From the IMG/VR virus record IMGVR_UViG_3300044712_001462, positions 160,529 to 224,528 of that record: a DNA stretch of 64,000 bases; one strand, 5' to 3'. Both the position numbers and the translations under genes were made by a program. Positions within the stretch are counted from its first letter, which is position 1, and every line of letters begins with the position of its first letter. Shown here piece after piece: positions 26,921 to 41,455 of the stretch. The notes beneath the pieces are model-generated. The model was given only the letters and a program-made list of their open reading frames with translations, was not told the DNA's origin and made no database searches.

Positions 26921-26949
26921 ATTATGACACGAAAAGTGCCAAAATTGAG
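26921..26949 (-). promoter_or_regulatory. Putative phage promoter, copy 1: CTCAAT-N17-CATAAT
   Basis: Shared architecture with 35652-35680 and 41427-41455. Confidence 0.65.
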
Positions 26950-26955
26950 TTAGCG

Positions 26956-26994
26956 AAAACAGAAAGGGCCAGTAAGCAAAAGCTCCTGGCCCTT
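26956..26994 (-). terminator. Intrinsic terminator after the 1590-aa gene
   Basis: AAGGGCCAG/CTGGCCCTT stem with T-rich tail. Confidence 0.7.
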
Positions 26995-27022
26995 ACGTCG
27001 TCCACAGGTAAGTATCTCGTCG

Positions 27023-30000
27023 TTACGCCATCGAGGCTCTCGACAGCTCTCCACCTCCGCCACCTTGCGGATAAAACTGTCCCCAGAAGTTCTTCATCGT
27101 ATCATCGTCTTTGTCCTGGTTTTGAGCCAAGAGCTGCCCCAACATTGCACTGGTAGCGTTAGGCTCTCCTCCGTCCCGCGCAATCGACGGAGGAACCGGA
27201 TCACGGTAACGCGGACTCAAACCAATCTGCGGAGCGAGTCGGTTATAGTCACTCAGCACATTACTTTTACCGTTCTGCCACAGACCCTTTATCAGATCCG
27301 TAAGACCTCCACCCTGCAGCATCGTGCCTAGACCCTGCATGACTGGGGACTGCGACATGGCATAAGCACCCGGAAATGCGCCTCGTATGCCTTCTTGAAC
27401 ACTATTCTGTACCTGACCTGGCAACTCTTTCATACGCTCATCAACATACTGCTTGCCCTGGTCCATCATCTGCTGACCTCGATCCAGGAACGACTCACCC
27501 ATGGCCTGTCCCTGATCCATAAACTTATTACCCATCGCGTCAGCACGACTTAATGTGTCATTGCGCATGTTGTTGGCCATATAGAGACCCGTGCCCATCA
27601 TGCCCGCACTAGCCGCCACAGGACCGTAGGGAGCCATTGCCTTAGCCGCGGGAGCCGCATTACGAATAACCGTACCAGCACCTTGCCTCAAAGCACCGCC
27701 AGCGCGCCCCACTCCTGAGCGGAAATAACCAGACGCCTGCGCCGCACCCGGAATAGCCTTAGGTAGAGCCTGAGTCGTCATTGACGATGTTCCTGCCGCA
27801 CGTGCAGCATTCAAGCCCGCAAGTGCCTCGGGACTACCGGCAGGGCCATGTGGAACAACCGACCCGCGATAACCACTGGGAACCTGAGGAGATGCAAGAG
27901 GTCGAGCTGCACCCGCATTATTTGCAGCCGCCCTAGCGGCATCATCCGCTGTGTTCATGACACCTTTGGCAACGTCGTCTGTCATCCCAGCCGCACCACG
28001 AGCCACGTCGTCTGCTGAACCTGCTACACCTTTTGCCACATCATCAACACTGCTGACACCCTGTCTAAGCAGACGCGGTGCGAGCGATTTCACACCAGTC
28101 CAGAGACCCTTACCGATCGTTATTGGATTAATCGCTTGTTTCTCCGAAGACAACTTTGTCTGGAACGGACTTTTCGGAGCGGCTAAAGCCGGAGACTTTG
28201 GAACAGCACCGACAGGATTAGCCATCTGGTTGCCACCGGATCCCGGAGGCGAGAACGTGCCATGTGTCTGTTGTATGTTCTTAGGCATTGCCATCTGATT
28301 CATGCTAGGATTGAGTGAAGCGCCCGTAGCAGGGCTGGGTTGAGCCATACTCTTATTCCAGGCTTGAGAGTATTCAGGTGTCATCGCTAACCGCGCATCT
28401 TGTTCAGGTAGACCGGCTTTACGGCGCATTTGACTATCCTGCATGTACGCGGCAACCGGTTCCATAATACGACCATCAGGCCCGTATCCGTACCGATAAG
28501 GTTTACCGTCAGGCTGCGACAACGTGCCACTGGTTTGTTGCATCATCTTACCTCTTGGATCACTGGATCCTGAGCCAGCCATCTGGGGAGCCTGCTGCGG
28601 AGTCATACCCGGTGTTCGTATAACCGGACCAGGATTAGTTCCACCCAGCATATTGCCACCCGCTACATCCTGAGACGGATCAGGCTTACGCACACCTGCC
28701 GTCTGCGGCGCTTGCAACGCGGGATTGTTAGCCATCAGCTCCTGAGATTGCTGCATCTGAGGAGCCTGACCCGGGCTCGCCGGTTGTCCACCCGCTGAAT
28801 AAGTAGGGCTTCCACTTCGACGCATCGCCTCTGCCCGCTCATACTTCTGACGCATCGCTTCGCGCATGCTGATCTGAGCCGGGCTGAGACTGTACTGGGG
28901 CTCTGGTTTTTGCGCTGCCGCGATCATCGGACTGCCGTCAGGCCGCAATACAGGCCTTCCATCCCGACCAAGAACGGGATTTAGTTGTCGGCCCGAGCCA
29001 CCTGCCCTGTTTGGCAAATATCCACCACCAGGTGCGGTCATGGGCATCCCATTCGGACCCATCAGCCGTGTTCCACCGCCAGAAAGCTGATTGTCCACAG
29101 CCTCTCTATTAGCGCGATTACGATTCATGCGTTGCTGAGCACCCCAAGCTTCCTGACCTTGCTGGCTCATGCCGCCGGGCATCACCGGAGCATTAAGGGA
29201 TGCCTCAGTCTCCGCTCTCGCCTTCGCAGAAACTTCATCAGCAGAAAGCCCTTCATAGCCGGGATTAGATGGTGCCGGTCGAGGAATAGGCGCAGCAGGC
29301 GACTCACCAGGTGCTGCACTACCTTGAGCCGGAGCATTCTGTCCAGAGGGCTGTAATTGGTTCGCCTGCCCCATCGCCTGAGGTGCTTGCATCGCAGGAG
29401 CAGGCGGAGCTGTCATCTGCTGAGGCTGACCGCCCACTGTCTGGGTCTGACCGCTATTCGCAAACGAGGGGTTATTCCACTTCGTGTAATCAGGACGCTG
29501 ATCGGGCTGTACACTCTCAGGAGCCTGCGCCTGCATTCGCTCAAGCCTTCGAACTTCACTTCTATTCCCAGCTCGCCGAGCCCGATCAAGCTGAGGCTGG
29601 AAGCGACTCGCCCACTCCGGAGGACCGGCTGGTTGTTGTGGGGCTTGAGGAGTTTGAGCCAAAACAGGCGTCACAGGAGCTTGCAGAGCCGGATTAGCTG
29701 GCGGCTTCGGACCCGCTTGCATCGCATAATCGTTGATCATACCCTCGCCAGACTGCGGAGCGCCTTGCATTGCATAATCGTTTATCATCTCTGTGCCACT
29801 CGGTAAGTCCTTACGCTCACCGACTGGTGAATTCGGATCCCAAGGACCTTGGCCAGCCATCTGATTGGCCAAAGCACCGGCTGACCAGGGCTTCGTAGAG
29901 CGACCTGTCTCATAGTCCTTCGCGCTAACGGGATTGGTGTTATTCGCAATGTCATGCACGACCTGCGGAATCACACCCTGTTGCTGCTCACGATCAAAGG

Positions 30001-31795
30001 CAGGCCCTGGGTGGTATCCTCCAGATCTACCCTGCATAGCACCACCGACAGCATTGAGGCCTAACATATTTTTATTAGCACCGGTCCACCAATTTAGCTT
30101 GTTTCCTAATTCGCTCATTACTGTACCGATTGGTCCGCCCATCCGAGCTAGACCACCACCCAGCAGCGCATACGGAGCCGTATTTAGAGCCTGTTGTGCT
30201 CCACCCATAGCCATGTTTGCACCAGTCCGCAATGCAGTATTCACCGCATCTTGTTTGAACGGCTCAGCCTCTTGCCGAATCTTGTTATATTCGTCACCAG
30301 TAGCAAGCGTCTGTGTGTTGTAGGCATGCTCTGGCCGTTGGGTATAATCCGCATTCATACGCGGATCCACAGAGTGACCCACATCTTTTAAACCCGACCG
30401 CACAGTCCGCAGACCCCACTCCCTGGCTTTATCCGCAAACTCATCCAAGCCAGCTACTGTTTCCGAATTAGGAGCCATCCATTTTAAAGGCTCAGTGACC
30501 AGCTGACCGGCCAAACCGCCTACATTTGCGAGAGCACCCGCGCCAGTAAAGGCCTCACCTTGAAAAGCCCTCCAGGCGTTTTCAGGTCCGCGAGTGTACG
30601 GACCCAGATAGTAATCCCAGCTACGCTGAGCCTGATGATCGTCTATAGCGCTTCGAGCAACACTCTGCCTATTCTGTTGGTCTTCGTAGTCCTGCTGGTA
30701 ATTATTCGCGTTGATACCTCTGGCTAGCCGCTCGTTTTGAGCAAGACCTGACTCTTGTACCTTAGCCCGTAACGCGTCCAGTCCAGGAATCGGAGGAGAT
30801 GCTGCCGCTTGACTTCCCATCGCACTCACCCTCGAGGGAGGAGGCGCTTGCTGGGGCATATCTCTGCGCAACGACTGCGTGAGTTGATCCGCAGCAGACA
30901 GTTGATTACCAGGAGCCGGTTGGCGAATCTGCAGGTCTTTTTCACCGCTCGGCGGCACATAACTGCCGCCAGTAGGATTCGGAACAGGGGCACCTTGAGT
31001 CGGCATGGGTGCTTGCAAAGCGGGATTAGCCGGAGGCACAGAAGGAGCTACAGGCGATGCCGGTGGCTGCTCGGGCGATGGGAGACCAGCTGGGTACTTA
31101 TCCCGTTGAGCCCAGGCAGAATCCACACCACGACCGTAAGAATCATTCTCATACCGAGCAAACGGATTCACCGCGGGATTACCCTGCGGGATATCTTGCT
31201 CCGACACTGGGACCAGCTCCACTGAGCTCTTAAACAAAAACCCACTCTTACCTACCGGTGGCATAATGCTATCCACCTTCTTGTTCCGAGCCACGTCCTC
31301 CAGGCTCACCTCGGGCCCGCGAGCATCTGGAGCGATCTTCCACTTCGGACGAACCTGACCAGAGGCCGCAACGCGCAAAGTACTCGCTAACTTCGTAGGT
31401 AACATCGGGGGAGCCATTCCGTGAGTTGTAACAGAGCCGGGAGTCTGTATTCCCTCTCTGTTCGCAGGTTGAGGATACTGAGGACTTGCTTTCAGAACGG
31501 TACGAGGTGGAACCTTTGAAGTAACAGGACCTTCACCAGGCATATAGATGGCCCCAGCTTTGTTCAGAAGCCCGGGCCCGCCAGGTATAGACGGTTTGTC
31601 CTGTTGGGTCTGCGGCTGCAGATGAGGAAACATCTTGGCTAAGAAAGGATGCACAGGACGACGCTGAACAGCGTTTTGACTCCCCATGCCCAAGACAGAA
31701 GCTGGACTAATCGTTGTCCTGGCCAACTGATCGTTAGAACCGACCGTCGGCATCCGCATGGGATCTTTAGCAAATCCAGCCATTGTGACTTCCAT
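27023..31795 (-). CDS. 1590-aa Pro/Gln/Gly/Ala/Met-rich, largely disordered protein; possible internal virion protein
   Basis: Long ORF with no Cys; internal repeats NPALQAP x3, MINDYAMQ x2, DDVA(K/R)G-type x4. Confidence 0.75.
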   Translation of the reverse strand: MEVTMAGFAKDPMRMPTVGSNDQLARTTISPASVLGMGSQNAVQRRPVHPFLAKMFPHLQPQTQQDKPSIPGGPGLLNKAGAIYMPGEGPVTSKVPPRTVLKASPQYPQPANREGIQTPGSVTTHGMAPPMLPTKLASTLRVAASGQVRPKWKIAPDARGPEVSLEDVARNKKVDSIMPPVGKSGFLFKSSVELVPVSEQDIPQGNPAVNPFARYENDSYGRGVDSAWAQRDKYPAGLPSPEQPPASPVAPSVPPANPALQAPMPTQGAPVPNPTGGSYVPPSGEKDLQIRQPAPGNQLSAADQLTQSLRRDMPQQAPPPSRVSAMGSQAAASPPIPGLDALRAKVQESGLAQNERLARGINANNYQQDYEDQQNRQSVARSAIDDHQAQRSWDYYLGPYTRGPENAWRAFQGEAFTGAGALANVGGLAGQLVTEPLKWMAPNSETVAGLDEFADKAREWGLRTVRSGLKDVGHSVDPRMNADYTQRPEHAYNTQTLATGDEYNKIRQEAEPFKQDAVNTALRTGANMAMGGAQQALNTAPYALLGGGLARMGGPIGTVMSELGNKLNWWTGANKNMLGLNAVGGAMQGRSGGYHPGPAFDREQQQGVIPQVVHDIANNTNPVSAKDYETGRSTKPWSAGALANQMAGQGPWDPNSPVGERKDLPSGTEMINDYAMQGAPQSGEGMINDYAMQAGPKPPANPALQAPVTPVLAQTPQAPQQPAGPPEWASRFQPQLDRARRAGNRSEVRRLERMQAQAPESVQPDQRPDYTKWNNPSFANSGQTQTVGGQPQQMTAPPAPAMQAPQAMGQANQLQPSGQNAPAQGSAAPGESPAAPIPRPAPSNPGYEGLSADEVSAKARAETEASLNAPVMPGGMSQQGQEAWGAQQRMNRNRANREAVDNQLSGGGTRLMGPNGMPMTAPGGGYLPNRAGGSGRQLNPVLGRDGRPVLRPDGSPMIAAAQKPEPQYSLSPAQISMREAMRQKYERAEAMRRSGSPTYSAGGQPASPGQAPQMQQSQELMANNPALQAPQTAGVRKPDPSQDVAGGNMLGGTNPGPVIRTPGMTPQQAPQMAGSGSSDPRGKMMQQTSGTLSQPDGKPYRYGYGPDGRIMEPVAAYMQDSQMRRKAGLPEQDARLAMTPEYSQAWNKSMAQPSPATGASLNPSMNQMAMPKNIQQTHGTFSPPGSGGNQMANPVGAVPKSPALAAPKSPFQTKLSSEKQAINPITIGKGLWTGVKSLAPRLLRQGVSSVDDVAKGVAGSADDVARGAAGMTDDVAKGVMNTADDAARAAANNAGAARPLASPQVPSGYRGSVVPHGPAGSPEALAGLNAARAAGTSSMTTQALPKAIPGAAQASGYFRSGVGRAGGALRQGAGTVIRNAAPAAKAMAPYGPVAASAGMMGTGLYMANNMRNDTLSRADAMGNKFMDQGQAMGESFLDRGQQMMDQGKQYVDERMKELPGQVQNSVQEGIRGAFPGAYAMSQSPVMQGLGTMLQGGGLTDLIKGLWQNGKSNVLSDYNRLAPQIGLSPRYRDPVPPSIARDGGEPNATSAMLGQLLAQNQDKDDDTMKNFWGQFYPQGGGGGELSRASMA

Positions 31796-31810
31796 GTCCT
31801 CGAGGCTTGG

Positions 31811-31852
31811 AAAAAGAGCGGACCCAACTGTGAGGAGGAGTTGAGTCCGCTC
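31811..31852 (-). terminator. Intrinsic terminator
   Basis: GAGCGGAC.CAACT/AGTTG.GTCCGCTC stem followed by T5. Confidence 0.7.
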
Positions 31853-31879
31853 CAGGGCCAGTAGGCGGGGAGCAAGCGC

Positions 31880-32254
31880 CTACTTAATGAACTCTTGACC
31901 AGCTTTCGTCAGAGAATAATAGCCGTAGCCTTCTCTCCAATCCCGATTAACCAGACCGTCTGCCACATACCCAGCCAGAACTGCTACAGCCTCTCGCCCA
32001 CAACCGGCTACACTCCGAAAAGTGGGAACGTTGATCGAGCGATACTCGTGGATAATCTTCAGGTGATCTGCCACGGTCATGTCGCCCGAATCCTGCACCG
32101 GCTCGGGTTCAGGCTCGGGCTTCTTCTCTACTGCGGATACCGGCTCTGGCGGTTTAACAACAGGTGCCTCCACCACAGGCTCAGAAACAGCATCTACACG
32201 CGTCTCACCAGGCAGAGGCTCGACAGCAAACGGTCTTTCAGGCTTCTTAGCCAT
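31880..32254 (-). CDS. Protein with C-terminal winged-helix-like domain
   Basis: P/E-rich linker, then ...LAGYVADGLV...YYSLTKAGQEFI (wHTH wing signature). Confidence 0.55.
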   Translation of the reverse strand: MAKKPERPFAVEPLPGETRVDAVSEPVVEAPVVKPPEPVSAVEKKPEPEPEPVQDSGDMTVADHLKIIHEYRSINVPTFRSVAGCGREAVAVLAGYVADGLVNRDWREGYGYYSLTKAGQEFIK

Positions 32255-33114
32255 TATTTCCCCTTCTTAGACTTCTTTTTCTTCTTACCACCACAGCCAG
32301 CTGTTTTGAGTTCTGGCTCGGCTCGATCTACTGCTTTACCCAGCAGGAGATTCGATACACCCTTACCCAATCCTTTACCTGCCATCATTCCACCAGCTGC
32401 ACCAACTCCGGTGCCAGCCAGTGCGCTGCCAATACCCGCAGCAGCAGCAAGACCTGGTTTATCTTTCAGCTTTTCAGCCAGTAAAGCACCGAGCACACTT
32501 CCTGCACCCAGACCACCTACCGCACCAACTCCCAAGCCTGCTCCAGCTCCTGCGCCAGGAAGCACACCTTGAGCCGCTCCGCGGATCTTCTGTTTATCAG
32601 GAGCCTGCCCAGCACCATAGGCTGCGCCCAGAACGGCACCGGTAGGCGCAAGGCTCGCGCCAGCACCTAGTGCACCTAAGCCTAAAGCTGCTCCACCGCC
32701 AGCCAACGCCGCACTCGCACCGTTTGAGCCCAGATACTTTTTGATCTTCTCGATAGTGGCCTGCAACTGACTAGGATCCGCAGCTTGCTTAACCGGAGAC
32801 TCTTCTGACATCTGTGGCTTCTTCTGCTTAGGCACTTTGACCTTACCCAGAGCACCCACCACGCTCTCGAAACGAGCATCATCCCAAGACCGACGTGTAA
32901 CTGCTTTCTTTTCGCCTTCCATGGCTTCTTTTCTCTCAGGTAAACCGGTGTGTTTGGTACTCGCAAAATGCTTGGCGTCAGTCTTACTGATCGACTGAGC
33001 GATGTCTGCAATATGTCCGGATGGTGCTTTGGCCTTACCCTGTTGGATAGCATGTACCCAACCGAATAGGCGCTGCTGGCTTCGACTGTGGGCTGGAATA
33101 GTTACACCCTCCAT
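32254..33114 (-). CDS. DUF3008-like N-terminal domain fused to a Gly/Ala-rich hydrophobic (glycine-zipper) region
   Basis: PAHSRSQQRLFG...DAKHFASTKHTGLPERK; GxxxG repeats; start uncertain. Confidence 0.65.
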   Translation of the reverse strand: MEGVTIPAHSRSQQRLFGWVHAIQQGKAKAPSGHIADIAQSISKTDAKHFASTKHTGLPERKEAMEGEKKAVTRRSWDDARFESVVGALGKVKVPKQKKPQMSEESPVKQAADPSQLQATIEKIKKYLGSNGASAALAGGGAALGLGALGAGASLAPTGAVLGAAYGAGQAPDKQKIRGAAQGVLPGAGAGAGLGVGAVGGLGAGSVLGALLAEKLKDKPGLAAAAGIGSALAGTGVGAAGGMMAGKGLGKGVSNLLLGKAVDRAEPELKTAGCGGKKKKKSKKGK

Positions 33115-33176
33115 GACCTGTCTACGGGGTCGTATCACTATAGTATGACCCATCTTAGACACAGCGCGCAAGCCGT

Positions 33177-33812
33177 TTAGATGTCCTCAAGCTCGCTGTC
33201 GTAGTAGTCGTCATCCTCGTCAGACAGCTCATCCAGAGACATTGCTGCTACATCGTCTACGTCTGACTCGCTCAACTTATCGCTCAGCAGATAAAGCCCA
33301 TCCGTCATCCCGTACTGGACAAAGAACTCCGCGATATCCCGTCCCATCTTTCTCCACATGGCCAGCAGGAAGCCGTCGATCGGAACACCCTCGCCTACCT
33401 CTACAGTACTAGGAAACGAGGTCGTCCTATCCTCCCAGCTAATATGAGCCGTCAATCCAACCGCCAGAGGTTTATGCTCTGGAGTCGGAAGCAGCGACAG
33501 AGAGATCATAGGCCAGTACGAATACAGCAGCGAAATGAAGGTAAAAGGATCCTTCAGCGCGGTTTCAAACTCATCGATCTCCTCAGAGTTGAGATCGTAG
33601 GTCGCCATCAGCTCTTCACGGTCTGGAAAGATCTCGTCCCGCTTCTGCAAATACTTGTAGAAGTCCTGCATCGAAACCGTCTTCGCATCGTCCGTGGTTT
33701 TGTCTGTATCTACCAGAAGCTGCCGAAACAGATGGAGAGACAAAGTGTAAGCTGGACTACTGCAGCGCAGATGCTCACGACCCATTGTGGACCTCTCGAT
33801 AATGCGCCTCAT
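33177..33812 (-). CDS. Hypothetical acidic protein
   Basis: ORF track; operon context. Confidence 0.65.
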   Translation of the reverse strand: MRRIIERSTMGREHLRCSSPAYTLSLHLFRQLLVDTDKTTDDAKTVSMQDFYKYLQKRDEIFPDREELMATYDLNSEEIDEFETALKDPFTFISLLYSYWPMISLSLLPTPEHKPLAVGLTAHISWEDRTTSFPSTVEVGEGVPIDGFLLAMWRKMGRDIAEFFVQYGMTDGLYLLSDKLSESDVDDVAAMSLDELSDEDDDYYDSELEDI

Positions 33813-34844
33813 ACCTCTTCAGGGCGGTATGTATTCCATCTAGCGCAGACTGCAGAGAGCTTGTCATGGAGATAAGCTGATCCAGCTTCTGCTCAAAACC
33901 ATACGGATCCACGGTGGGCAGAAAACAGCGATCAAGGAAATCCTCTTCTCGGAACAGCTGCTCTCGAATACGAGCAGTTGCCTGGAGCGGCTCTAAGAGC
34001 TGCTGACAGAACTGACAGAGACCTCCCTGGTCATCCGCTAATCCAGAGGAGATGACTGATCCGCATCCCATGCAAATCGCTGTGTCCATCTTTTACGCCT
34101 CGTCTTTAATCTCTGTAGCCGGAAACAGCACACGCATAGGATCGTTACGTGAGTACCACTCCACCATTTCCTGCTTTATTGCCCACAGAACCCGCTCAAA
34201 GCAATCAGCACAGATGTTGTCTGTCCCGCACTCCGGACAAGGCACACTAGCCATCTTGCACCTTGCTTACTTCACCAGTTCCAGAGCAGGCAAGACACGA
34301 CAAAGGATGCATCAGCCCCCAATCGTAATCCTCACCCCACTGACCCGTCCCACCACAAGACTTGCATTTAAACATCTCAGGCAGCTCACCCAATTCTCGG
34401 AGAGCCGCATGAATCTCCGGCGACTCCAGACAGTCGTCAAAGCACAGCTTGACCAAACTATTCCACATCCAACGCTGGTCCTGAACCGTAGCCTGGTAGC
34501 CAAAGGACAAGCTGTTGTAGATGTGCCTCAGCTCATTCGCGTCCATGTCATACCTTCATTGTGCCCGAGGTATCGATGTTGTTAATCGCATCGTACGCCG
34601 AAGCGCTTCCACCAGGCAGAACCAGGACGCGCACACCGTTCGTCAGAATCAGGCCATAGTTATCGTCAGCCGGATAAACACCTTGAATCCGGTTCTCTTC
34701 CAGGTGCTTCTTAGCAAAACGCAGGAACATCTCCGCCTTCTCGGCTTCTTTCTTACCCACATCTTCAATGCCTGGATTCAGCTCAGCCAGGTTGTCTACA
34801 AAAGCCCCTACCAAGTACTGCAGCAGATCTTGTTCTTCAGACAT
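33775..34844 (-). other. Small hypothetical ORFs (33775..34089 CxxC, 34247..34546 CxxCxGxG Zn-finger, 34548..34844)
   Basis: CMGC..CQFC; CKSCGGTG..CLACSGTG (DnaJ-type Zn motif). Confidence 0.6.
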
Positions 34845-34859
34845 TCGATCACCCCTAAC

Positions 34860-34878
34860 TCTCTAATAGCGATAACAC
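34860..34878. promoter_or_regulatory. Conserved intergenic box, copy 3 (TCTCTAATAGCGATAACAC)
   Basis: Identical 19-mer to copy 2. Confidence 0.7.
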
Positions 34879-34881
34879 AGA

Positions 34882-35283
34882 CTAACTGTAAACTTTGAAC
34901 TCGGTGTGCCCAGAAGGATGCATGATCTCGTTGATCTGAGCCTTCTTAGCGCTGCGACGGTCATTCAGGTACGGCACCAGCAGTGTCTGGAAAGTAAATG
35001 CCGCAGACTCGGGGCCCGCCCAAGTGCCATTGCGGATCATCCTCCGGATCGCATCCTCGACATCCCAGAGTTGGCTGTTGAGCTGCGACAATTCCCCATA
35101 CCAGCTCACCAATAACGTCTCTCCGTCAACCCTCAGCGCCATAGCCTTTTTCAGCTGGGTGGTCAGTTCATGAGATTCTTGAAGCAGCGCTTCTAACTTC
35201 TCTACGGGTAGCGACCCGGCATGACGCCTCTTCAGATCCATGATCGTCAGCCGATCAAGCATCTCCGCGAAGCTCGTCGGCAT
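34882..35283 (-). CDS. DUF6165-like protein
   Basis: SFAEMLDRLTI..LK...LNSQLWDVEDAIR...NDRRSAKKAQIN...EFKVY (family recalled); GAGG before ATG 35283. Confidence 0.65.
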   Translation of the reverse strand: MPTSFAEMLDRLTIMDLKRRHAGSLPVEKLEALLQESHELTTQLKKAMALRVDGETLLVSWYGELSQLNSQLWDVEDAIRRMIRNGTWAGPESAAFTFQTLLVPYLNDRRSAKKAQINEIMHPSGHTEFKVYS

Positions 35284-35488
35284 CCTCAACGACACTGGGC
35301 TCGGCGGCGGGCTTGGGCTTTTGTTTAAGCTTTCGTCCATACTCACCTGGGGACTGTCGGTTGTTGGGTCGAGTGCTGTAGAGGAGTCTGTTGATGTACT
35401 CACGATCCTTGTCCTTATCCAGTTTGAGATTAGCCCGACGACCGTACATAGCCGCCGCCTTTTCACCCAGCCATCTGATGACATCCAT
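35255..35488 (-). CDS. Hypothetical basic protein
   Basis: First ORF after the structured leader. Confidence 0.5.
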   Translation of the reverse strand: MDVIRWLGEKAAAMYGRRANLKLDKDKDREYINRLLYSTRPNNRQSPGEYGRKLKQKPKPAAEPSVVEDADELRGDA

Positions 35489-35533
35489 TTCTACAGTTCT
35501 CTCTTCTTGAGCGCGAGATTAACTCGCAATAGC

Positions 35534-35645
35534 TAAAAAAAAAGAAGGGCCAACCGTGTCCCAGGAATGGATCGCGGTCAGCCCCCTTTCTCGGTTTAGT
35601 TAGTTTGTGGATGCAAAAACATCTCATCCACAAACGTTCGTAGAA
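35534..35645 (-). ncRNA. Candidate ~110-nt structured small RNA or attenuator leader
   Basis: Follows a promoter-like element; perfect 11-bp hairpin (35603-35635), then a long terminator stem and T9. Confidence 0.4.
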
Positions 35646-35651
35646 TCATGT

Positions 35652-35680
35652 ATTATGCCGCAAAAAGGTCAGAAATTTAG
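35652..35680 (-). promoter_or_regulatory. Putative phage promoter, copy 2: CTAAAT-N17-CATAAT
   Basis: Same architecture as copy 1. Confidence 0.65.
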
Positions 35681-38592
35681 GCCGCAGCGGTAGCTGGTGA
35701 CGAGGCATTTGTGGGCCCGCCAAACTGCTGCTGCATGAGCATCGCGCCACCTTGCATTTTTGCTTGATTGCGAATCTGATTCATCTTGGCCTTAACGAGT
35801 GAGTGAAGTACCTCATTCTTCTTGGCCAATGCACGAAGCTCACTATCCTTGACCGGTTCCGGTAAGCCAAGGAGTTCTTGAGCCAGCGACTCAGCTGTCT
35901 GCAACATCTGCTCAGGAGTCTGAGGCATATTGCCACTCGCCATCAGTCCCGTCACTGGCGGAGGCGTCATAGGCATACCCGTCGCCGGATCAACTTGACC
36001 CTGACCGCCAGCCGCAGCAGGATCCGCAGGTTGACCAGCAGGCATACCAGGCTGAGCTGGCATCCCTTGAGCTACTTGCGCACCCATTGCGGACTGATCC
36101 ATCTGTTCTTGCATCTCTTGCTGAGCAGTCTGCTCGGCCATGGCTTCTTCCGATTGCGCCTTAAGCTCGTCTCTGTACTCCAGGCCCAGCGAACGCAGAC
36201 CAGTCGTACGACTTACCAATCCGGTTGTCATCAGTTCCAGCAGAGCCATGTGACGCTGCAGATCGTCTGCGTGAGTAACCCGCTTATGGACTGCTTTGAT
36301 CGACTCCCAGGAAAGAACTCGAGAGATGCGTTCGACGAGCCAATTTAGGAATCGGTTGTTATCGTGAACCAGGTGATGCCATGTCGCCTCAAACAAACGC
36401 AACGAAACCGGGGCCGTCTGCAACTGAAGCGTGCCTTTGTACAACTCTACCGGCGTACCAGCACCGTTGAGCAGAGTCTCCAAGCCCTGATCCAGCAACT
36501 CGCGGGGTGCTAAAGCAGCTGCATCACCGCCCAAAGCCTGATACTGAACAGGGAAGGGGAGTGTGGACCACGAGGCGGGATCTCTGCGGCGCTTACGGAT
36601 CATTGATCGAACTTGGCCCATAAAATCGCCGCCGTTCATCGATAGCAGGGGATCACTAGCCATCCCTCCACTACCTCCCTTTACCGCGGGAGTGATTAGA
36701 CGGAATGGAATTACATAATCCAGAGCAATCGCTTCGTTATACCGGTGGAGAACCTGAACATACCAAGCTTGCCGGAAGTTCGTGAGTAACCGGGTAATAC
36801 CCCAGCCTCGATTCTGTCGACCACCCAGAGTGGCTTCTTTCATGTGATGGATAACACCGGGATGGAACCGGAAAAGCTGATTCTTCTTAATCGCTTCCAT
36901 CACCTGCTGAGGACACCGCTCTAAATGAAACAGCGTTCCTTCCCGTACTTGGCGCTTGTAGTCCTCGGGGATCTTCCAGAGATATGCCACGTCATCCGTG
37001 AACTGGTCATGAAGGATCTCGATGTCGTGTGGCGACCAGTACTTGAGCTTCAAGGCATCTGGGCGATTATCAGGCTCATCCTTCAACTTCCAGGGTCCGC
37101 GGTAGCCTGAACCGGTTTTGCACTTGGGGCACGTCGCCGTAAAGCTGAAGTCATTGCTAAATTTGAATTTGAAGTCTGGGTTCTCGTAGACATTCTTCAG
37201 GACAACCTGAAGACCGCATTTCGGACAACACATAAACCGACGGAAAGGAACCTGCAACGACGTGAACGCATTACCATAGCAGTTGCCGGTTATCACAGCC
37301 TGCTCAACGACAAACGAGTGCGTTTCCATCTCCACACAGCAGAAAACGTCATCTGTTATGCCTGTGGGACGCGCTCCCTTAACGCGGATAAACTGGCCAT
37401 ACGAAGTTGGCTCGAAATTTCTCTCAAACTTCTCTCTATGTTTCTCCAGCAGGAAATCTTGAGGCAACATGAACCGCTTCAATAACGTCACATAGTACAT
37501 AGGGCCTGTATACGACTCCACAGACCCATCCGACCTAACAAAAGACGAGGTTCGCGTATGTTCTCGTACGGGTCCAGTACACATTCCTATTCTCGGCAGT
37601 TGCTCAACTATACGCTCGAGCGTTATGCGAGCACTCTGGGTCAAAAGTGCACAACCGTAAGTATCAACCGACCCATCGGCAGCCAGAAATCCGCAAACGA
37701 ACCCGTACCAGTAACTGGCACTTTTATCATTCTCTGGTAGATCCTTATACCTGGCCGGTAGGCCGTTCTTAACAGCCATCTCCTCCCGGGACGGTGGCCG
37801 AGTCACTTCAGAACCATACCCGTCGAAGTAGGGTAGTACCTCAATTTTATCCCCAAAGAAACAGGCCGCTGACTGACACCCTTCGTTATACCGAGTACCA
37901 TCTCCAAACACGAAACCGTGGCGTACACCTTCCCGGAATTCCTCATTCTGTTCGGGACGCGGCGCTACCGTGCGCTCAATCCGATGGCCATCAATCAGCT
38001 TTGTAGTGGGAATACGCACTAATTTGTTAGTACTATTCTTAACGATCCACTCATGCTCTGGTGTAGCCAGCACCGTTCTGCCGTCGCTAAACTCGACCTC
38101 CCACAGCGGCTGGCGTCCAAATGCCTTGAACGTTGCCGGACGATAAACTCCACCTTCGGAAAGCACATCAACTGTCTGACCCTCCAGATCGCGCAGTTTG
38201 AACACCCCGTTGCGTGTAACTGCCTTCACGTCACCGTGAAAGCACATACGATCCATGCCGCGTTCGAACAAAAACGGCATGACACCAATATTGGTAAACA
38301 GGTTCTGCCACTTCTCTTTCTCGTCGTCCCCCAGCGTATCTCGAGAGTCCGTGGCTCCGAAATCTACGTCTGTCAGGAAGTAGGCCACGATGCGCTGCAT
38401 GGCCATCTTGTAAGTCGACTGAGCCTCGAACACATACTCAGCCATCTTCAAAACGCTGCGGATATCCTCCGGCATCGAGAGACTGGCCATATCCAGCCAC
38501 GGGCTCGGAAACGCATCGGACCCCCTCGCGCTACTAGCCCAACCACCAGCCGGATCCATCTGCGAGCGCATTGTAAACAGACTCATATTCAT
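35677..38592 (-). CDS. Portal-like protein with intein and Zn-ribbon insertion
   Basis: After splicing reads RGMDRM-CYGNAF (portal-type GNAF motif); IHHMK...RGWGI; long Q/P/M-rich C-terminal tail. Confidence 0.6.
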   Translation of the reverse strand: MNMSLFTMRSQMDPAGGWASSARGSDAFPSPWLDMASLSMPEDIRSVLKMAEYVFEAQSTYKMAMQRIVAYFLTDVDFGATDSRDTLGDDEKEKWQNLFTNIGVMPFLFERGMDRMCFHGDVKAVTRNGVFKLRDLEGQTVDVLSEGGVYRPATFKAFGRQPLWEVEFSDGRTVLATPEHEWIVKNSTNKLVRIPTTKLIDGHRIERTVAPRPEQNEEFREGVRHGFVFGDGTRYNEGCQSAACFFGDKIEVLPYFDGYGSEVTRPPSREEMAVKNGLPARYKDLPENDKSASYWYGFVCGFLAADGSVDTYGCALLTQSARITLERIVEQLPRIGMCTGPVREHTRTSSFVRSDGSVESYTGPMYYVTLLKRFMLPQDFLLEKHREKFERNFEPTSYGQFIRVKGARPTGITDDVFCCVEMETHSFVVEQAVITGNCYGNAFTSLQVPFRRFMCCPKCGLQVVLKNVYENPDFKFKFSNDFSFTATCPKCKTGSGYRGPWKLKDEPDNRPDALKLKYWSPHDIEILHDQFTDDVAYLWKIPEDYKRQVREGTLFHLERCPQQVMEAIKKNQLFRFHPGVIHHMKEATLGGRQNRGWGITRLLTNFRQAWYVQVLHRYNEAIALDYVIPFRLITPAVKGGSGGMASDPLLSMNGGDFMGQVRSMIRKRRRDPASWSTLPFPVQYQALGGDAAALAPRELLDQGLETLLNGAGTPVELYKGTLQLQTAPVSLRLFEATWHHLVHDNNRFLNWLVERISRVLSWESIKAVHKRVTHADDLQRHMALLELMTTGLVSRTTGLRSLGLEYRDELKAQSEEAMAEQTAQQEMQEQMDQSAMGAQVAQGMPAQPGMPAGQPADPAAAGGQGQVDPATGMPMTPPPVTGLMASGNMPQTPEQMLQTAESLAQELLGLPEPVKDSELRALAKKNEVLHSLVKAKMNQIRNQAKMQGGAMLMQQQFGGPTNASSPATAAA
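37282..38244 (-). mobile_element. Intein (321 aa) with LAGLIDADG homing endonuclease
   Basis: Block A CFHGDV, block B ATPEHEW, HGFVFGDG and GFLAADG motifs, block F DVFC, C-terminal VITGN/C. Confidence 0.9.
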
Positions 38593-38603
38593 CCCTGACG
38601 CAT

Positions 38604-38631
38604 AAAAAAAGGCGATACCAGAGGCACCGCC
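38604..38631 (-). terminator. Intrinsic terminator
   Basis: GGCGGTGCC-TCT-GGTATCGCC stem (G-U pairs) followed by T7. Confidence 0.65.
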
Positions 38632-38663
38632 ATTATCCTGGAGAGGAGCTGCTCAGCGCAAAG

Positions 38664-38858
38664 TCAATTACGGCAGCAACCGCCGTCCCTGAAAGCTTTT
38701 AAAGCTTCTGCATTGTCCGATCGGCAGCAACAAGCAGCTTTATCCGCCAGCCGCTTACAAACATGCTCCTCCAGCTGGTCCGCCGAAGCGCACTTTGTTT
38801 CATCCTCGGGAGGGGTCACACCCTGTTCGATCGCACCTGTTTTTACCATTTCATCCAT
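38664..38858 (-). CDS. Small Cys-rich hypothetical protein
   Basis: GGAGG SD; overlaps upstream stop. Confidence 0.6.
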   Translation of the reverse strand: MDEMVKTGAIEQGVTPPEDETKCASADQLEEHVCKRLADKAACCCRSDNAEALKAFRDGGCCRN

Positions 38859-39630
38859 ATGCGTATTCCTCCGCCGCAGAAATCATGGCATCCGCTTTCT
38901 CCTCATCCGCAATAATCAGATTGATCTGGGAGAAGATGCCGAAGTTGTGAACAAACCCCAGACTAAACACATTCCAGGTCCGATTCGTTGCCGAATGCGA
39001 GACCTTAATCGTCCTGTCCTTACCAAAACTCGGAGGCTCGAAAAACGTTCCGAACTCAAACCGTGAATCATAAACCAGGAACAGACCACCATCCTGCTCA
39101 GACACCCAGTGATACGAGCTGGTGATCTTTCCCCCAGCACCCATATCAAACGTCACCTTGTGTTTTGGCTTCTCGGGCTCCGGGCCCAATCCCGGAATCC
39201 CCAGAGACTCAAAAACCCTGTCCAGAATGTCGGCTACCGCGGACTTAGCGATCCGATCATCGTCTGCAGCCACAGGCTCTTCTCGATCGCTCAGCTGAGC
39301 CTCCAGAGCCTCGATCTTCGCTACTAGCGCCGACACGTCCACAGTCTGAGGTGCACTCGTCTGAGACGCTTTGGTCACCTTCTTCTTCGCCGCGGGCGTC
39401 ACCTTCTTCGCCATAGTCTCTTCATCCTGTTCTACGATGTCTTGCATGTCCTGCATCATCTGGGCCATATAGTGATAAGCCAATACCGTGCGATCCTCCA
39501 CGGAGCTGGTTTCCCGGGCTGCGCGCTCAAAAGCCGCTTTCGCCTGTTCTGGACTAATCTGTGCCAAATCCAGCGGCATCCCGCCTTCAGCTAAGACGTC
39601 GGCACTGGTCTTAATCGTTGTGATTGTCAT
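38851..39630 (-). CDS. Hypothetical protein
   Basis: Start reassigned to ATG 39630 because the upstream part of the ORF is a terminator. Confidence 0.7.
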   Translation of the reverse strand: MTITTIKTSADVLAEGGMPLDLAQISPEQAKAAFERAARETSSVEDRTVLAYHYMAQMMQDMQDIVEQDEETMAKKVTPAAKKKVTKASQTSAPQTVDVSALVAKIEALEAQLSDREEPVAADDDRIAKSAVADILDRVFESLGIPGLGPEPEKPKHKVTFDMGAGGKITSSYHWVSEQDGGLFLVYDSRFEFGTFFEPPSFGKDRTIKVSHSATNRTWNVFSLGFVHNFGIFSQINLIIADEEKADAMISAAEEYAYG

Positions 39631-39645
39631 GTTCACCTGATAAGT

Positions 39646-39687
39646 AAAAAAAAAAGGGCAGTGCTGACAAATGTCAGCACCACCCTC
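39646..39687 (-). terminator. Intrinsic terminator
   Basis: GTGCTGACA/TGTCAGCAC stem followed by T10. Confidence 0.75.
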
Positions 39688-39716
39688 CCCCAACCGTCCA
39701 CCCAGACAGTAAATCA

Positions 39717-41153
39717 CTAGGCGGCGACCATATCTCGCTGAGTCTTCTGTTGCTGACGCTTGTGCGTGATTCGGCGCGTGTCAGGAATTCCTACTCGGAA
39801 CATGACGTCGCCAATCTGCACCTCACGTTCCCCACGATAGCGCATCGGCGGGAGCATGAAAACCTCAGCTGCCTCGTCCAGACCGAAAGCCCGACGGAAA
39901 TCCCAATACCAAGACACTCCACCACGTTCGCGGCGAGCCTGATCCAGAACCGACGTTACGTAGCTCATCTTCAACAAGGGACCCGACACCGTCGGGACAC
40001 GCACGACACGGGACTGGAGGAACTTATCCACCAACCACATGAAGTGCTCCCCGGTCTTTTCACGGAGCTGGGCCTCGGTATAGAAACCGCTCGGGACATC
40101 AACCGGGAAACTCGCCGGAAGCACAAACTCACCGGTCTTGAGATCTTTGAGTATGTCCAGCACCAACGTGTCAGAAACCTGGAAGTTTCGCAGCATGGTC
40201 AAATGCTCGAGCGTGTCGCTGGAGAACTCCACGAGCACATCCGGAGCCCACACACTGGGATCCTGAATCACTTCCGGAGTTCCACCGGGGGTGATATTTT
40301 TCTTGTCACAACCCAACACTGCATTGTTCATGATCTCCTGCATTTCATTGCAGACATCAAACAAAAAGCAGTGATGCTCGTCATCAAGATTCCACGATGA
40401 CGACGGAATACCACGCATCAACCGAAATCTACCCTTCTCCATCTGGGCTCGCGTATATCGGCAAGTCTTACGAAGAGTGACTACCACGGTCTTCGGATCT
40501 ACCTCGCCTACTACCTCCACACAATTGGGCTCCGGCATGGTGCCTACAGCCAGAACCGCCCTGGGATCCTTGCCTAAGAAGTCAGCTACATCAAACCGGT
40601 ACAACGCAGCCCAGTCGCCATTCGGCAACTCGCCAAGACAGACATCCAGATAATCTGACTTGGCGCGAGTCTGCCGGACCAACCGCAGCACACCCGGTTC
40701 CCCGGTTAAATCAGCCTTCAACGGACCAATGTCCGGACACTCCAGCTTCATCTGATGCATACGGTGCATAGGTTTCGCGAAGTCCACGTAGCAGAAGTGA
40801 TCCGGATCGCTATTCACAACCACGCTGTCTCGAACCAGTCGACCGTCCTGCAAAATCGCCGGAGTTTCTATTTGTCTTCCACGCACTGATGCATTCTTGT
40901 ACGGCTGATCCCACATCATCAGGAACTGAGCATCGTTGTGATGCACGACCGGCCCTAATGGGCGGTGCGAATAAATTCGCTTACCCCCCAAATGAATGTA
41001 ATTCCAGCGTGGAACTACTGCGATCTGTAACAGATCACGCCGGATTTCGCCCAGCAAAATTGCCTTACCGCCAACTCGTTGATACTCCAACCGGTAAACT
41101 TCCTGAGCCTTGTTGTTGCCTTCGCCCGTCTCTGGATTTTCAATACGGAACAT
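39717..41153 (-). CDS. Hypothetical 478-aa protein
   Basis: Long ORF with AAGGGGG SD; no recognised motif. Confidence 0.75.
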   Translation of the reverse strand: MFRIENPETGEGNNKAQEVYRLEYQRVGGKAILLGEIRRDLLQIAVVPRWNYIHLGGKRIYSHRPLGPVVHHNDAQFLMMWDQPYKNASVRGRQIETPAILQDGRLVRDSVVVNSDPDHFCYVDFAKPMHRMHQMKLECPDIGPLKADLTGEPGVLRLVRQTRAKSDYLDVCLGELPNGDWAALYRFDVADFLGKDPRAVLAVGTMPEPNCVEVVGEVDPKTVVVTLRKTCRYTRAQMEKGRFRLMRGIPSSSWNLDDEHHCFLFDVCNEMQEIMNNAVLGCDKKNITPGGTPEVIQDPSVWAPDVLVEFSSDTLEHLTMLRNFQVSDTLVLDILKDLKTGEFVLPASFPVDVPSGFYTEAQLREKTGEHFMWLVDKFLQSRVVRVPTVSGPLLKMSYVTSVLDQARRERGGVSWYWDFRRAFGLDEAAEVFMLPPMRYRGEREVQIGDVMFRVGIPDTRRITHKRQQQKTQRDMVAA

Positions 41154-41164
41154 AATGTTCCCCC

Positions 41165-41314
41165 TTATTGATTTTTGGCGTAATGTCTATCTCGTAGGTA
41201 TTCCTTCACCGGAATCACCACGTGCCGCACTCTTCCCGTGCGACAGTCCTCAAGCTTCAACCTCACGTGCCCCGACGGTATGTCGCGTCCTACTCGGCGC
41301 GTCCGTCGAATCAT
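41165..41314 (-). CDS. Small basic hypothetical protein (49 aa)
   Basis: GGGGGAA-ATG; MIRRTRRVGRDIPSGHVRL... Confidence 0.4.
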   Translation of the reverse strand: MIRRTRRVGRDIPSGHVRLKLEDCRTGRVRHVVIPVKEYLRDRHYAKNQ

Positions 41315-41426
41315 TTCCCCCGTACTGCTCAAGCAGTAAACTCTTGTCATACAACCACTTATGTAATACCCATGACAGCACTCCCTGATGTGACGTTGAG
41401 ATACAAAAGCTAACGATCACCCAGGT

Positions 41427-41455
41427 ATTGTGCCTCAAAAGTGGGGGAAATTTAG
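41427..41455 (-). promoter_or_regulatory. Putative phage promoter, copy 3: CTAAAT-N17-CACAAT
   Basis: Same architecture as copy 1. Confidence 0.6.

What the first reader, a model, noticed from the sequence alone, without database searches (positions are those of the whole stretch)
26921..41455. Three copies of a non-canonical promoter CT(A/C)AAT-N17-CA(T/C)AAT
Seen on the minus strand: CTCAAT-TTTGGCACTTTTCGTGT-CATAAT (26949-26921), CTAAAT-TTCTGACCTTTTTGCGG-CATAAT (35680-35652) and CTAAAT-TTCCCCCACTTTTGAGG-CACAAT (41455-41427). All three have an exact 17-nt spacer with a shared CTTTT tract. Each lies in one of the large intergenic gaps at the head of a gene block. Inference: the geometry is sigma70-like with a TATAAT-like -10 but a -35 that is not TTGACA, implying a phage-encoded sigma/activator or an unusual host sigma specificity.
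Basis: partly seen in the sequence, partly recalled or inferred. Interest (0 to 1): 0.6.

Follow-up and report, generated by a model that had tools for sequence, protein, structure and literature searches.

The report
Promoters for a phage's own sigma
The three sites are real members of a nine-copy, very tightly conserved promoter family in a 224-kb soil phage that carries its own bacterial-type RNA polymerase and sigma factor, so the phage probably reads these promoters with its own enzyme and not the host's.

Summary
The window is the last 64 kb of a 224.5-kb virus record. The dyad CT(A/C)AAT-N17-CA(T/C)AAT occurs 8 times, all on the coding strand, where 0.07 are expected. A PWM adds a ninth site. 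The nine score 29-35 bits and the next best position scores 8.4. All nine are intergenic. The full consensus is CTAAATT, an A/T tract, G(-14)nC-ATAAT-A, then TG just before the expected start. The same element sits in intergenic DNA of four relatives (40-62.5% GC), once in the same syntenic gap where only the motif is conserved. The phage encodes one sigma-70-family protein and a beta-beta' RNA polymerase. The two co-occur in all 20 near-complete relatives. In the cultured relative Salmonella phage Arash, both were detected in virions. Host-type sigma-70 promoters are depleted. The motif matches the register of sigma-28/FliA promoters (CTAAA-N19-ATAA) but differs at -15 to -12. Best reading: a phage-specific promoter class read by the phage's own sigma, probably on its own polymerase, driving non-structural units, some of them short terminated RNAs. 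No RNA data exist, so transcript starts are untested.

The parts
26921..26949 (-). Promoter copy P1: CTCAAT-N17-CATAAT. The start is expected near 26914-26915. The weakest of the nine (29.1 bits).
26956..26992 (-). Terminator-like hairpin directly upstream of P1: GGGCCAG, 13-nt loop, CTGGCCC, then a T-rich tail. This gives a terminator-then-promoter boundary.
   Evidence: read from the sequence; missed by the scan because its loop exceeds 8 nt
26604..26870 (-). First ORF after P1: 88 aa, GGGAG Shine-Dalgarno, ATG 50 nt after the -10. No family match.
35652..35680 (-). Promoter copy P2: CTAAAT-N17-CATAAT (34.7 bits, joint best). The TAA inside CTAAAT is the stop codon of the upstream 971-aa gene. 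The start is expected near 35645-35646.
35532..35646 (-). Short structured transcript or leader from P2: a 12-bp 5' hairpin, then a long GC-rich terminator hairpin and U9. MFE -47.3 kcal/mol, z -6.3.
34882..35484 (-). 200-aa ORF behind the P2 terminator. It would be reached only by read-through or from another start. No family match.
35677..38592 (-). 971-aa homologue of Arash portal protein gp204 (27.6% identity over 402 aa, E 1.7e-48). It ends inside the -35 box of P2.
41427..41455 (-). Promoter copy P3: CTAAAT-N17-CACAAT (31.7 bits). The start is expected near 41420-41421. An AT-rich tract lies upstream.
39717..41153 (-). 478-aa ORF, the main gene of the P3 unit, preceded by a 273-nt leader. 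No family match.
39650..39691 (-). Strong intrinsic terminator (19 pairs plus a T-run) that closes the P3 unit just after the 478-aa gene.

Best explanation
The motif is a phage-specific promoter class with nine copies in the genome and three in the window. Its anatomy is a -35 box CTAAAT(T), a spacer of exactly 17 nt with an A/T tract, an extended -10 with an invariant G at -14, a -10 box CATAAT with A-11 and T-7, an A at -6, and TG at -3/-2. It is most likely read by the phage's single sigma-70-family protein (genome 59967-60707, minus strand). In this model region 4.2 (TPGAITQRK) reads CTAAA, and regions 2 and 3 read G-14 and CATAAT. This sigma probably acts as the specificity subunit of the phage's own RNA polymerase. 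That polymerase consists of a beta-beta'N fusion carrying an intein (genome 116475-122210) and a beta'C subunit (genome 112644-114542). By analogy with the cultured relative Arash, the enzyme is probably carried in the virion and starts transcription of non-structural, early-type units. Several units begin with a hairpin plus an intrinsic terminator. They would give short RNAs of 55-110 nt unless termination is overcome. Shown here: the motif, its statistics, its positions, its conservation, and the presence of the sigma and polymerase genes. Inferred: which sigma reads the motif, which core enzyme it sits on, virion delivery, and timing.
For: 1. The class is discrete. Eight exact copies occur where 0.07 are expected, only spacing 17 is used, a ninth copy comes from the PWM, and the nine score 29-35 bits against 8.4 for the next best position. 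All are intergenic and on the coding strand.
2. The context is promoter-like. Terminators lie directly upstream of the copies at window 26949 and genome 136946. ORFs with Shine-Dalgarno sequences start 23-273 nt downstream. The P3 unit is closed by a strong terminator.
3. There is a phylogenetic footprint. CTAAAT-N17-[CT]A.AAT occurs in intergenic DNA of G026, G001 (62.5% GC), G006 (40% GC) and G004. The copy at genome 38049 lies in the same syntenic gap in G026, G001 and G006, where only the motif aligns. Over 20 sites, C-35, T-34, A-32, A-31, G-14 and A-11 are invariant. G-14 was not in the search pattern used for G001 and G006.
4. The phage has its own machinery. The sigma scores 30.8 bits for Sigma70_r3 (cut-off 25.3), hits phrog_351 at 6.9e-10 and NCBIfam SigB/F/G at 1e-7. 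Its model has pLDDT 80, and all top Foldseek hits are sigma factors, the best being B. subtilis SigD. It is the only sigma-like ORF found. RNAP beta and beta' domains are present (Rpb2_6 at 3e-48, Rpb1_2, Rpb1_5).
5. Sigma and RNAP beta co-occur in 24 of 26 relatives, and in 20 of 20 that are at least 90% complete.
6. In Arash, virion mass spectrometry found beta (Gp206, top spectral count), beta' (Gp216) and the sigma homologue Gp10 at 100% coverage (PMC10585845; homology).
7. Arash has a parallel element. GGTATAAG occurs 32 times on the reverse strand and 3 times forward, 20-40 nt before SD+ATG, often with C(A/T)AATAA upstream. Its sigma keeps the region 2.3-2.4 core, but its region 4.2 helix is different.
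8. None of the nine sites lies in the 57-122 kb block that holds most homologues of Arash virion proteins.
9. Sigma-70-type promoters are depleted: 3 and 4 per strand against 7-15 in shuffles, none intergenic.
10. Complex prediction of the sigma with beta'N residues 1499-1911 gave 'weak support'. The score was 0.59 and the best of 3 controls was 0.00. The mark was reached by 51 of 78 solved complexes and 2 of 108 mismatched pairs. At 0.60 or under it was reached by only 5 of those 78 solved complexes and by all 4 mismatches that passed (of 180). The runs agree in at least 29% of contacts and the partner's pLDDT is at least 62. The pass may reflect memory of solved sigma-beta' complexes.
Against: No transcript data exist: no RNA run holds this phage. 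The link between sigma and motif is correlative. The co-variation rests on five CTAAA-type genomes against one outgroup, Arash. Nine promoters cannot transcribe about 300 genes, so other signals that I could not define must exist. The CTAAA form was found in only about 5 of the 50 sigma-bearing records scanned, and Vibrio phage D69 shows no GGYATAAK enrichment. The motif's register equals that of host sigma-28 promoters, which are conserved across bacteria, so conservation across hosts does not exclude a host FliA. The sigma lacks the aromatic region 2.3 residues of sigma-70: L-G-T-H-V-V-N where sigma-A has F-S-T-Y-A-T-W. The virion evidence comes from a homologue that is only 26% identical. 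The complex prediction gave only weak support.
Confidence: 0.6

Rival explanations
1. The sites are promoters read by the host's flagellar-type sigma (sigma-28/FliA/SigD) on host RNA polymerase.
For: In the P. aeruginosa sigma-28 open complex, the -35 element is TCTAAAG (-36 to -30) and the -10 element is GCCGATAA (-15 to -8) (PMC12784957). The phage motif has C-35 T-34 A-33 A-32 A-31 and A-11 T-10 A-9 A-8 in the same register, with 19 nt between CTAAA and ATAA. Sigma-28 consensus sequences are conserved across phyla, which would also explain conservation among phages of different GC content.
Against: Positions -15 to -12 read c-G-g-C, with C-12 in 18 of 20 sites and G-14 in 20 of 20, not GCCG. 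The CGA core of sigma-28 promoters is never present, and -30 is T, not G. The phage carries its own sigma and polymerase, which would be redundant under this model. FliA is absent from non-motile hosts and is held in check by FlgM (established knowledge). I know of no phage shown to depend on FliA; this comes from memory and was not searched exhaustively.
Confidence: 0.12
2. The sites are read by the host primary sigma through the near-consensus -10 (CATAAT) and the extended -10. The CTAAAT box is then bound by a phage or host activator that replaces the -35 contact, as in T4 MotA/AsiA sigma appropriation.
For: The -10 matches TATAAT at 5 of 6 positions, with A-11 and T-7 kept in all nine sites. 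The spacing is 17 nt. G-14 is the key base of extended -10 promoters. T4 middle promoters have exactly this logic: a sigma-70 -10 box plus a non-sigma box near -30 (established knowledge).
Against: No MotA or AsiA homologue was found in this phage or in five relatives (those searches had no positive control, so this is weak evidence). Ordinary sigma-70 promoters are depleted and none is intergenic, which is odd for a phage that depends on host sigma-70. Conservation of A-6 and TG at -3/-2, and 30 bits of information, are atypical for sigma-70 promoters. The sigma's region 4.2 helix co-varies with the -35 box.
Confidence: 0.12
3. The dyad is not a promoter. It is a binding site for another DNA-binding protein (repressor, partition or packaging factor) or a repeated mobile element end.
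For: No transcript evidence exists. The P2 copy lies between a stop codon and a terminator, an unusual place for a promoter. Nine copies in 224 kb is a low number for a general promoter.
Against: All copies point the same way as the genes, lie upstream of ORFs or short terminated RNAs, and often directly follow terminators. The geometry and the conserved bases (A-11, T-7, G-14, 17-nt spacer) are those of sigma-type promoters. Flanks are unalignable between genomes, so it is not a mobile element.
Confidence: 0.05

Closest known systems
Sigma-28 (FliA/SigD) promoters: TCTAAAG-N14-GCCGATAA
   Same: Same register and spacing: CTAAA at -35 to -31 and ATAA at -11 to -8. A GC-rich extended -10 lies directly upstream of ATAA (PMC12784957). 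The sigma's best structural match is B. subtilis SigD.
   Different: Positions -15 to -12 are cGgC and not GCCG. T-7 and A-6 are conserved, and -30 is T. By profile the phage sigma is closer to SigA/SigB/RpoS (1e-11 to 1e-9) than to FliA (4e-5). In region 4.2 only the [S/T]-Q of sigma-28's S-R-V-S-Q is shared.
Salmonella phage Arash (OQ632216.1) and Vibrio phages D69/D148/D181
   Same: Cultured relatives with the same fused beta-beta'N polymerase (32-33% identity) and a homologue of this sigma (26% identity). In Arash both are virion proteins. Arash has a parallel element, GGTATAAG, about 32 strand-consistent copies, with a GGYATAA core like the GGCATAAT found here.
   Different: The -35 box differs (C(A/T)AATAA, variable spacing), the copy number is higher, and Arash has a second sigma-like gene, gp196, with no homologue here. 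The Arash paper reports no promoters. D69 shows no such enrichment.
phiKZ / AR9 jumbo-phage multisubunit RNA polymerases and their promoters
   Same: A phage-encoded beta/beta'-type polymerase with short conserved phage-specific promoters. A virion-packaged enzyme transcribes early genes (PMC7598289, PMC13282480).
   Different: Those enzymes are split into 4-5 polypeptides, are very divergent, and have no sigma-70-family subunit. Reviews state that no sigma homologue is present (PMC7824862, PMC13282480). Their promoters lack a -35/-10 dyad, and AR9 reads the template strand. Here the polymerase is close to bacterial enzymes (Rpb2_6 at 3e-48), beta and beta'N are fused, and a recognisable sigma is encoded.
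Phage-encoded sigma factors that redirect host core polymerase (SPO1 gp28 and gp33/34, T4 gp55, 'group 2' jumbo phages)
   Same: A phage sigma defines a phage-only promoter consensus that differs from the host's.
   Different: Those phages encode no polymerase core (PMC7824862). Here sigma and core are both phage-encoded and co-occur across the clade.
T4 middle promoters (MotA box plus sigma-70 -10, with AsiA)
   Same: A sigma-70-like -10 box combined with a non-TTGACA upstream box.
   Different: No MotA or AsiA was detected. The upstream box sits at -35 with a strict 17-nt spacer, not at -30.
Lambda pR'-tR' (6S RNA) and HK022 put: promoter-proximal terminators overcome by antitermination
   Same: Three of the nine promoters here, and both in G001, are followed within 55-110 nt by a hairpin plus an intrinsic terminator.
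   Different: No antiterminator has been identified here. Whether the short RNAs are end products or attenuated leaders is unknown.

Membership tests
Sigma-70-family-dependent two-block promoter | Two hexamers separated by 17 +/- 1 bp | tested here: met
   Exactly 17 nt in 9 of 9 sites; no other spacing from 0 to 60 occurs.
Sigma-70-family-dependent two-block promoter | -10 box with A at -11 and T at -7 | tested here: met
   CA(T/C)AAT in 9 of 9 sites. A-11 is present in 20 of 20 sites across five genomes.
Sigma-70-family-dependent two-block promoter | Transcripts start 6-8 nt downstream of the -10 box | not testable with these tools
   No RNA run holds the phage.
Primary-sigma (TTGACA / TATAAT) promoter | -35 box resembling TTGACA | tested here: not met
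   CTAAAT matches 2 of 6 positions. The consensus scan lists none of the three sites.
Sigma-28 / FliA-class promoter | -35 TCTAAAG and ATAA at -11 to -8 in the right register | tested here: met
   CTAAA-N19-ATAA is identical in register to the fliC promoter numbering in PMC12784957.
Sigma-28 / FliA-class promoter | Extended -10 GCCG directly before ATAA (the CGA core) | tested here: not met
   cGgC, with C-12 in 18 of 20 sites; no site has CGATAA.
Sigma-28 / FliA-class promoter | Recognition by FliA holoenzyme | not testable with these tools
   Needs in vitro transcription or a fliA mutant host.
Sigma-70 protein family (the 247-aa ORF) | Region 3 and region 4 helix-turn-helix domains | tested here: met
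   Sigma70_r3 scores 30.8 bits (cut-off 25.3). Sigma70_r4_2 is sub-threshold (16.7 bits). phrog_351 hits at 6.9e-10. The profile aligns through region 4.2 of SigA and SigB.
Sigma-70 protein family (the 247-aa ORF) | Region 2 domain that binds the beta' clamp helices and reads the -10 box | tested here: inconclusive
   There is no Pfam Sigma70_r2 hit. The predicted fold aligns over about 250 columns with full-length sigmas. Regions 2.3-2.4 align but lack the Y/W/W aromatics. The complex with beta'N gave weak support, 0.59 against a best control of 0.00.
FliA/WhiG subfamily of sigma factors | Scores above the subfamily cut-off and is closest to FliA | tested here: not met
   TIGR02479 scores 23.7 bits against a cut-off of 189.6. 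The profile is closer to SigA/SigB/RpoS than to FliA.
phiKZ/AR9-type jumbo-phage RNAP system | beta and beta' split into 4-5 polypeptides, two paralogous sets, no sigma-70-family subunit | tested here: not met
   There is one set: a beta-beta'N fusion plus beta'C. A sigma-family gene is present.
T4-type sigma appropriation (middle promoters) | MotA and AsiA homologues encoded | tested here: inconclusive
   No hits in six genomes, but the controls were silent too.

The most novel reading that the evidence does not exclude
This clade of 180-230-kb phages carries a complete bacterial-type transcription initiation system: a fused beta-beta' core plus a true sigma-70-family factor. The system is packaged in the virion and injected with the DNA. 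It reads a private promoter code, CTAAAT-N17-G(-14)nCATAAT, that borrows the sigma-28 register. Early transcription would therefore need neither host sigma nor host polymerase. Promoter-proximal hairpin-terminator modules would act as an antitermination-based timing switch or as a source of small regulatory RNAs.
Probability: 0.35. Interest if true: 0.8.

Novelty: new variant of a known kind. Interest (0 to 1): 0.62.

Why it matters
Reviews of jumbo phages describe two exclusive strategies. A phage either brings a divergent multisubunit polymerase without any sigma (phiKZ, AR9), or it brings sigma factors that redirect the host core (PMC7824862, PMC13282480). This phage and at least 20 near-complete relatives have both, and here a sharply defined sigma-type promoter can be assigned to that system. 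It gives a concrete, testable promoter code for a widespread, mostly uncultured phage clade found in rhizosphere, sludge and groundwater. It predicts the promoters of the cultured relative Arash, for which none are published. It also offers a compact orthogonal sigma-promoter pair and a natural experiment on how sigma region 4.2 and -35 boxes co-evolve.

Tried and rejected
1. Near-identical phages: megablast of 16 kb against INPHARED found nothing.
2. A single-protein scan of IMG/VR with the sigma found nothing. The alignment-based scan was needed.
3. The exact reader pattern and a relaxed -10 version were scanned in 25 and 50 sigma-bearing records. Only G026, G001 and G006 matched, with one hit in G008 and one chance-like hit in G017. 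G004 emerged only from the PWM.
4. RNA evidence: no RNA run holds the phage. Contigs from four DNA runs were laid on 35500-41480. One activated-sludge contig is identical over 35547-35836, but the table does not resolve the motif positions, so it is not useful as a footprint.
5. A second promoter class was sought by k-mer and dyad enrichment and by reading 93 upstream regions. AAGAG-N15-GTGG-type dyads are codon-usage artefacts. GCGCTA is only mildly enriched. 'TTTTAGCTAT' has three copies. No class could be defined.
6. Function of the genes downstream of the promoters: Pfam and PHROGs gave nothing useful for 20 proteins, so timing could not be read from annotation.
7. T7-type polymerase, Sigma70_r2, an alpha subunit and an Arash gp196-like second sigma were not found. 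The searches lacked positive controls.
8. MotA and AsiA were not found, and the controls were silent.
9. Vibrio phage D69 shows no GGYATAAK enrichment. Arash has no CTAAAT-type dyad.
10. A Markov-chain simulation timed out and was replaced by the analytic expectation.
11. Rfam and tRNA scans of the window found nothing.

Full report
**1.
The three minus-strand sequences are present exactly as quoted, at 26949-26921, 35680-35652 and 41455-41427. The window is the last 64 kb (160529-224528) of a 224,528-bp virus record with 52.8% GC. About 87% of its called genes are on the minus strand. In the whole record, CTMAAT-N17-CAYAAT occurs 8 times on the reverse strand, 0 times forward, and 0 times when the pattern is read backwards. 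Hexamer counts predict 0.07 such pairs (Poisson P about 1.5e-14). Among spacings 0-60 only 17 is ever used.

A PWM built from the eight finds a ninth copy at genome 159630 (CTTAAT...CATAAT). The nine score 29-35 bits, and the next best position on either strand scores 8.4. All nine lie in intergenic DNA, which is about 12% of the genome. It is the only clear dyad found in the intergenic DNA.

**2. Anatomy.**
Other copies have AAAA.

- **P1 (26949)** and the copy at genome 136946 directly follow terminator hairpins.
- **P3 (41455)** drives a 273-nt leader and a 478-aa gene that ends at a 19-pair terminator, 39691-39650.
- **P2 (35680)** is unusual. Its -35 box contains the stop codon of the upstream 971-aa gene. 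About 105 nt downstream lies a strong hairpin plus a terminator with U9 (MFE -47.3 kcal/mol, z -6.3).

Two further copies (genome 141603 and 137467) and both copies in relative G001 have the same layout of promoter, 5' hairpin and terminator within 55-110 nt. These units give either short RNAs or attenuated leaders.

**3. What could read it.**
The record encodes one sigma-70-family protein of 247 aa (genome 59967-60707, minus strand). The evidence:

- Sigma70_r3 scores above the Pfam cut-off.
- phrog_351 'RNA polymerase sigma factor' hits at 6.9e-10.
- NCBIfam SigB/F/G scores 1e-7 and FliA_WhiG 3e-5.
- An AlphaFold model built on 22 homologues has pLDDT 80. Its Foldseek hits are all full-length sigma factors, the best being B. 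subtilis SigD.

No second sigma-like ORF was found.

Unexpectedly, the record also encodes a multisubunit RNA polymerase. A 1911-aa ORF carries beta domains (Rpb2_6 at 3e-48) fused to the beta' N-terminal domains (Rpb1_1, Rpb1_2), interrupted by an intein with a LAGLIDADG endonuclease. A 632-aa ORF carries Rpb1_5. No alpha subunit was found.

Sigma and RNAP beta co-occur in 24 of 26 related IMG/VR records, and in all 20 that are at least 90% complete.

A complex prediction of the sigma with beta'N residues 1499-1911 gave 'weak support'. The score was 0.59 and the best of 3 controls was 0.00. The mark was reached by 51 of 78 solved complexes and 2 of 108 mismatched pairs. At 0.60 or under it was reached by only 5 of those 78 and by all 4 mismatches that passed (of 180). 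The runs agree in at least 29% of contacts and the partner's pLDDT is at least 62. Because sigma-beta' complexes are solved, the pass may show likeness only.

**4. Relatives.**
Cultured relatives exist. Salmonella phage Arash and Vibrio phages D69/D148/D181 have the fused polymerase (32-33% identity) and a homologue of the sigma (26% identity). In the Arash paper, virion mass spectrometry found RNAP beta Gp206 (highest spectral count), beta' Gp216 and sigma Gp10 at 100% coverage. No promoters are described (PMC10585845).

De novo analysis of Arash found GGTATAAG(t/a)aa(a/g)GTGTAA, 32 copies reverse against 3 forward (controls 6 and 10). The copies lie 20-40 nt before SD+ATG of minus-strand genes, and many have C(A/T)AATAA about 13 nt upstream. 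The virion-protein genes seen in the annotated stretches of Arash lie mostly on the other strand. The -10 cores are alike (GGTATAAG in Arash, GGCATAAT here). The two sigmas share the region 2.3-2.4 core (L-x-T-H-V-x-N), but their region 4.2 helices and -35 boxes both differ.

Among metagenomic relatives, the CTAAA form was found in G026, G001 (62.5% GC), G006 (40% GC) and G004 (as CTAAA[CT]-N17-CATATA). All of these share the 4.2 helix SPGA[IV]SQR. The copy at genome 38049 lies in the same syntenic gap in G026, G001 and G006. In the alignment of those gaps only the motif survives. Over 20 sites, C-35, T-34, A-32, A-31, G-14 and A-11 are invariant.

**5. Placement in the genome.**
Homologues of Arash virion proteins (major capsid protein, gp222, gp218, gp13, tail genes, polymerase, sigma) fill genome 57-122 kb. 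None of the nine sites lies there. Eight sites are at 137-202 kb among mostly small unknown ORFs, and one is at 38 kb. Host-type sigma-70 promoters are depleted (3 and 4 per strand against 7-15 in shuffles) and none is intergenic.

Together with the virion data from Arash, this favours an injected phage holoenzyme reading these promoters early. That step is inference. Annotation of the downstream genes gave nothing, and no RNA run exists.

**6. Comparison with known systems.**
The motif has the register of sigma-28 promoters. In the P. aeruginosa open complex the elements are TCTAAAG (-36 to -30) and GCCGATAA (-15 to -8) (PMC12784957). The phage motif has CTAAA at -35 to -31 and ATAA at -11 to -8, with the same 19-nt distance. 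It differs at -15 to -12 (cGgC, never CGA), at -30, and by its conserved T-7 and A-6.

The sigma is not a FliA orthologue. Profile searches place it nearer to SigA/SigB/RpoS than to FliA. So the motif works like a group-3 sigma promoter but is not a member of the FliA regulon class by the tests available. A host FliA remains a rival (about 0.12), as does host primary sigma plus an activator (about 0.12; no MotA or AsiA found).

The phiKZ/AR9 systems differ in having split, divergent subunits, no sigma-family protein and no -35/-10 dyad.

**7. Novelty and verdict.**
A phage-specific sigma-type promoter is a known kind of thing. What is new is its setting: a clade with both a bacterial-type polymerase core and a true sigma, which reviews treat as mutually exclusive strategies. 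The sigma-28-like code is private to the phage, and several promoters are followed closely by terminators. I rate it a new variant of a known kind, with interest 0.62. I put about 0.85 on the sites being promoters and 0.6 on the full best explanation.

Noticed in passing
genome 116475-122210, minus strand (outside the window; L015:12475-18210): RNAP beta and the N-terminal half of beta' are fused in one 1911-aa ORF. It is interrupted at about aa 1128-1498 by an intein with a LAGLIDADG homing endonuclease. Relatives have ORFs of 1460-2500 aa, so intein content varies.
   Followed up: partly
window 37276-38238, minus strand, inside the portal-like gene 35677-38592: Contigs from an activated-sludge run and a groundwater run skip exactly 963 bp (321 codons, in frame) here. 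The segment gives a sub-threshold Intein_splicing hit (E 1.7e-4, 21.9 bits against a cut-off of 35.8). It is probably an intein present or absent between strains.
   Followed up: partly
window 57634-61014, minus strand: A family A DNA polymerase of 1126 aa with an N-terminal uracil-DNA-glycosylase-like domain and a 3'-5' exonuclease. The PaBG paper describes a DNA polymerase I with a uracil-DNA glycosylase domain as unusual (PMC7412058). The best phage matches are only 23% identical.
   Followed up: partly
window 35538 (genome 196066); genome 139962 and 126099: Three intrinsic terminators are followed immediately by the same box, TTTTAGCTAT, and then after about 20 nt by a GC-rich CGCGCT-like stretch. 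This may be a second signal class, but there are too few copies to judge.
   Followed up: partly
genome 74901, 57329 and 9528 (outside the window): GAGATAGCGCTATTA(C/G)A, which contains the perfect palindrome ATAGCGCTAT, recurs at three gene junctions just before start codons. The copy at genome 38049 of the promoter is preceded by GAGATAG as well.
   Followed up: no
Salmonella phage Arash OQ632216.1, whole record: About 32 strand-consistent copies of GGTATAAG(t/a)aa(a/g)GTGTAA lie 20-40 nt upstream of SD+ATG. This is an unpublished candidate promoter class for a cultured phage. Arash also has a second sigma-like gene, gp196, that does not appear in the part of the virion table I read.
   Followed up: partly
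whole genome G000: Consensus sigma-70 promoters (at least 10 of 12 matches) are about threefold depleted relative to shuffles, and none is intergenic.
   Followed up: partly
G001 124089-124230 and 189106-189230: Both copies of the motif in this 62.5% GC relative are followed by nearly identical starts (ACATGCAGGCAA.TTAGCC) and by a terminator about 75-105 nt downstream. This suggests a conserved small RNA family driven by this promoter.
   Followed up: partly
genome 29305-30006, minus strand (L145:1305-2006): A free-standing HNH endonuclease (phrog_374, 1.9e-65) lies next to a plus-strand ORF at 27449-29308. That ORF matches the first ORF of Arash and is possibly the terminase.
   Followed up: no
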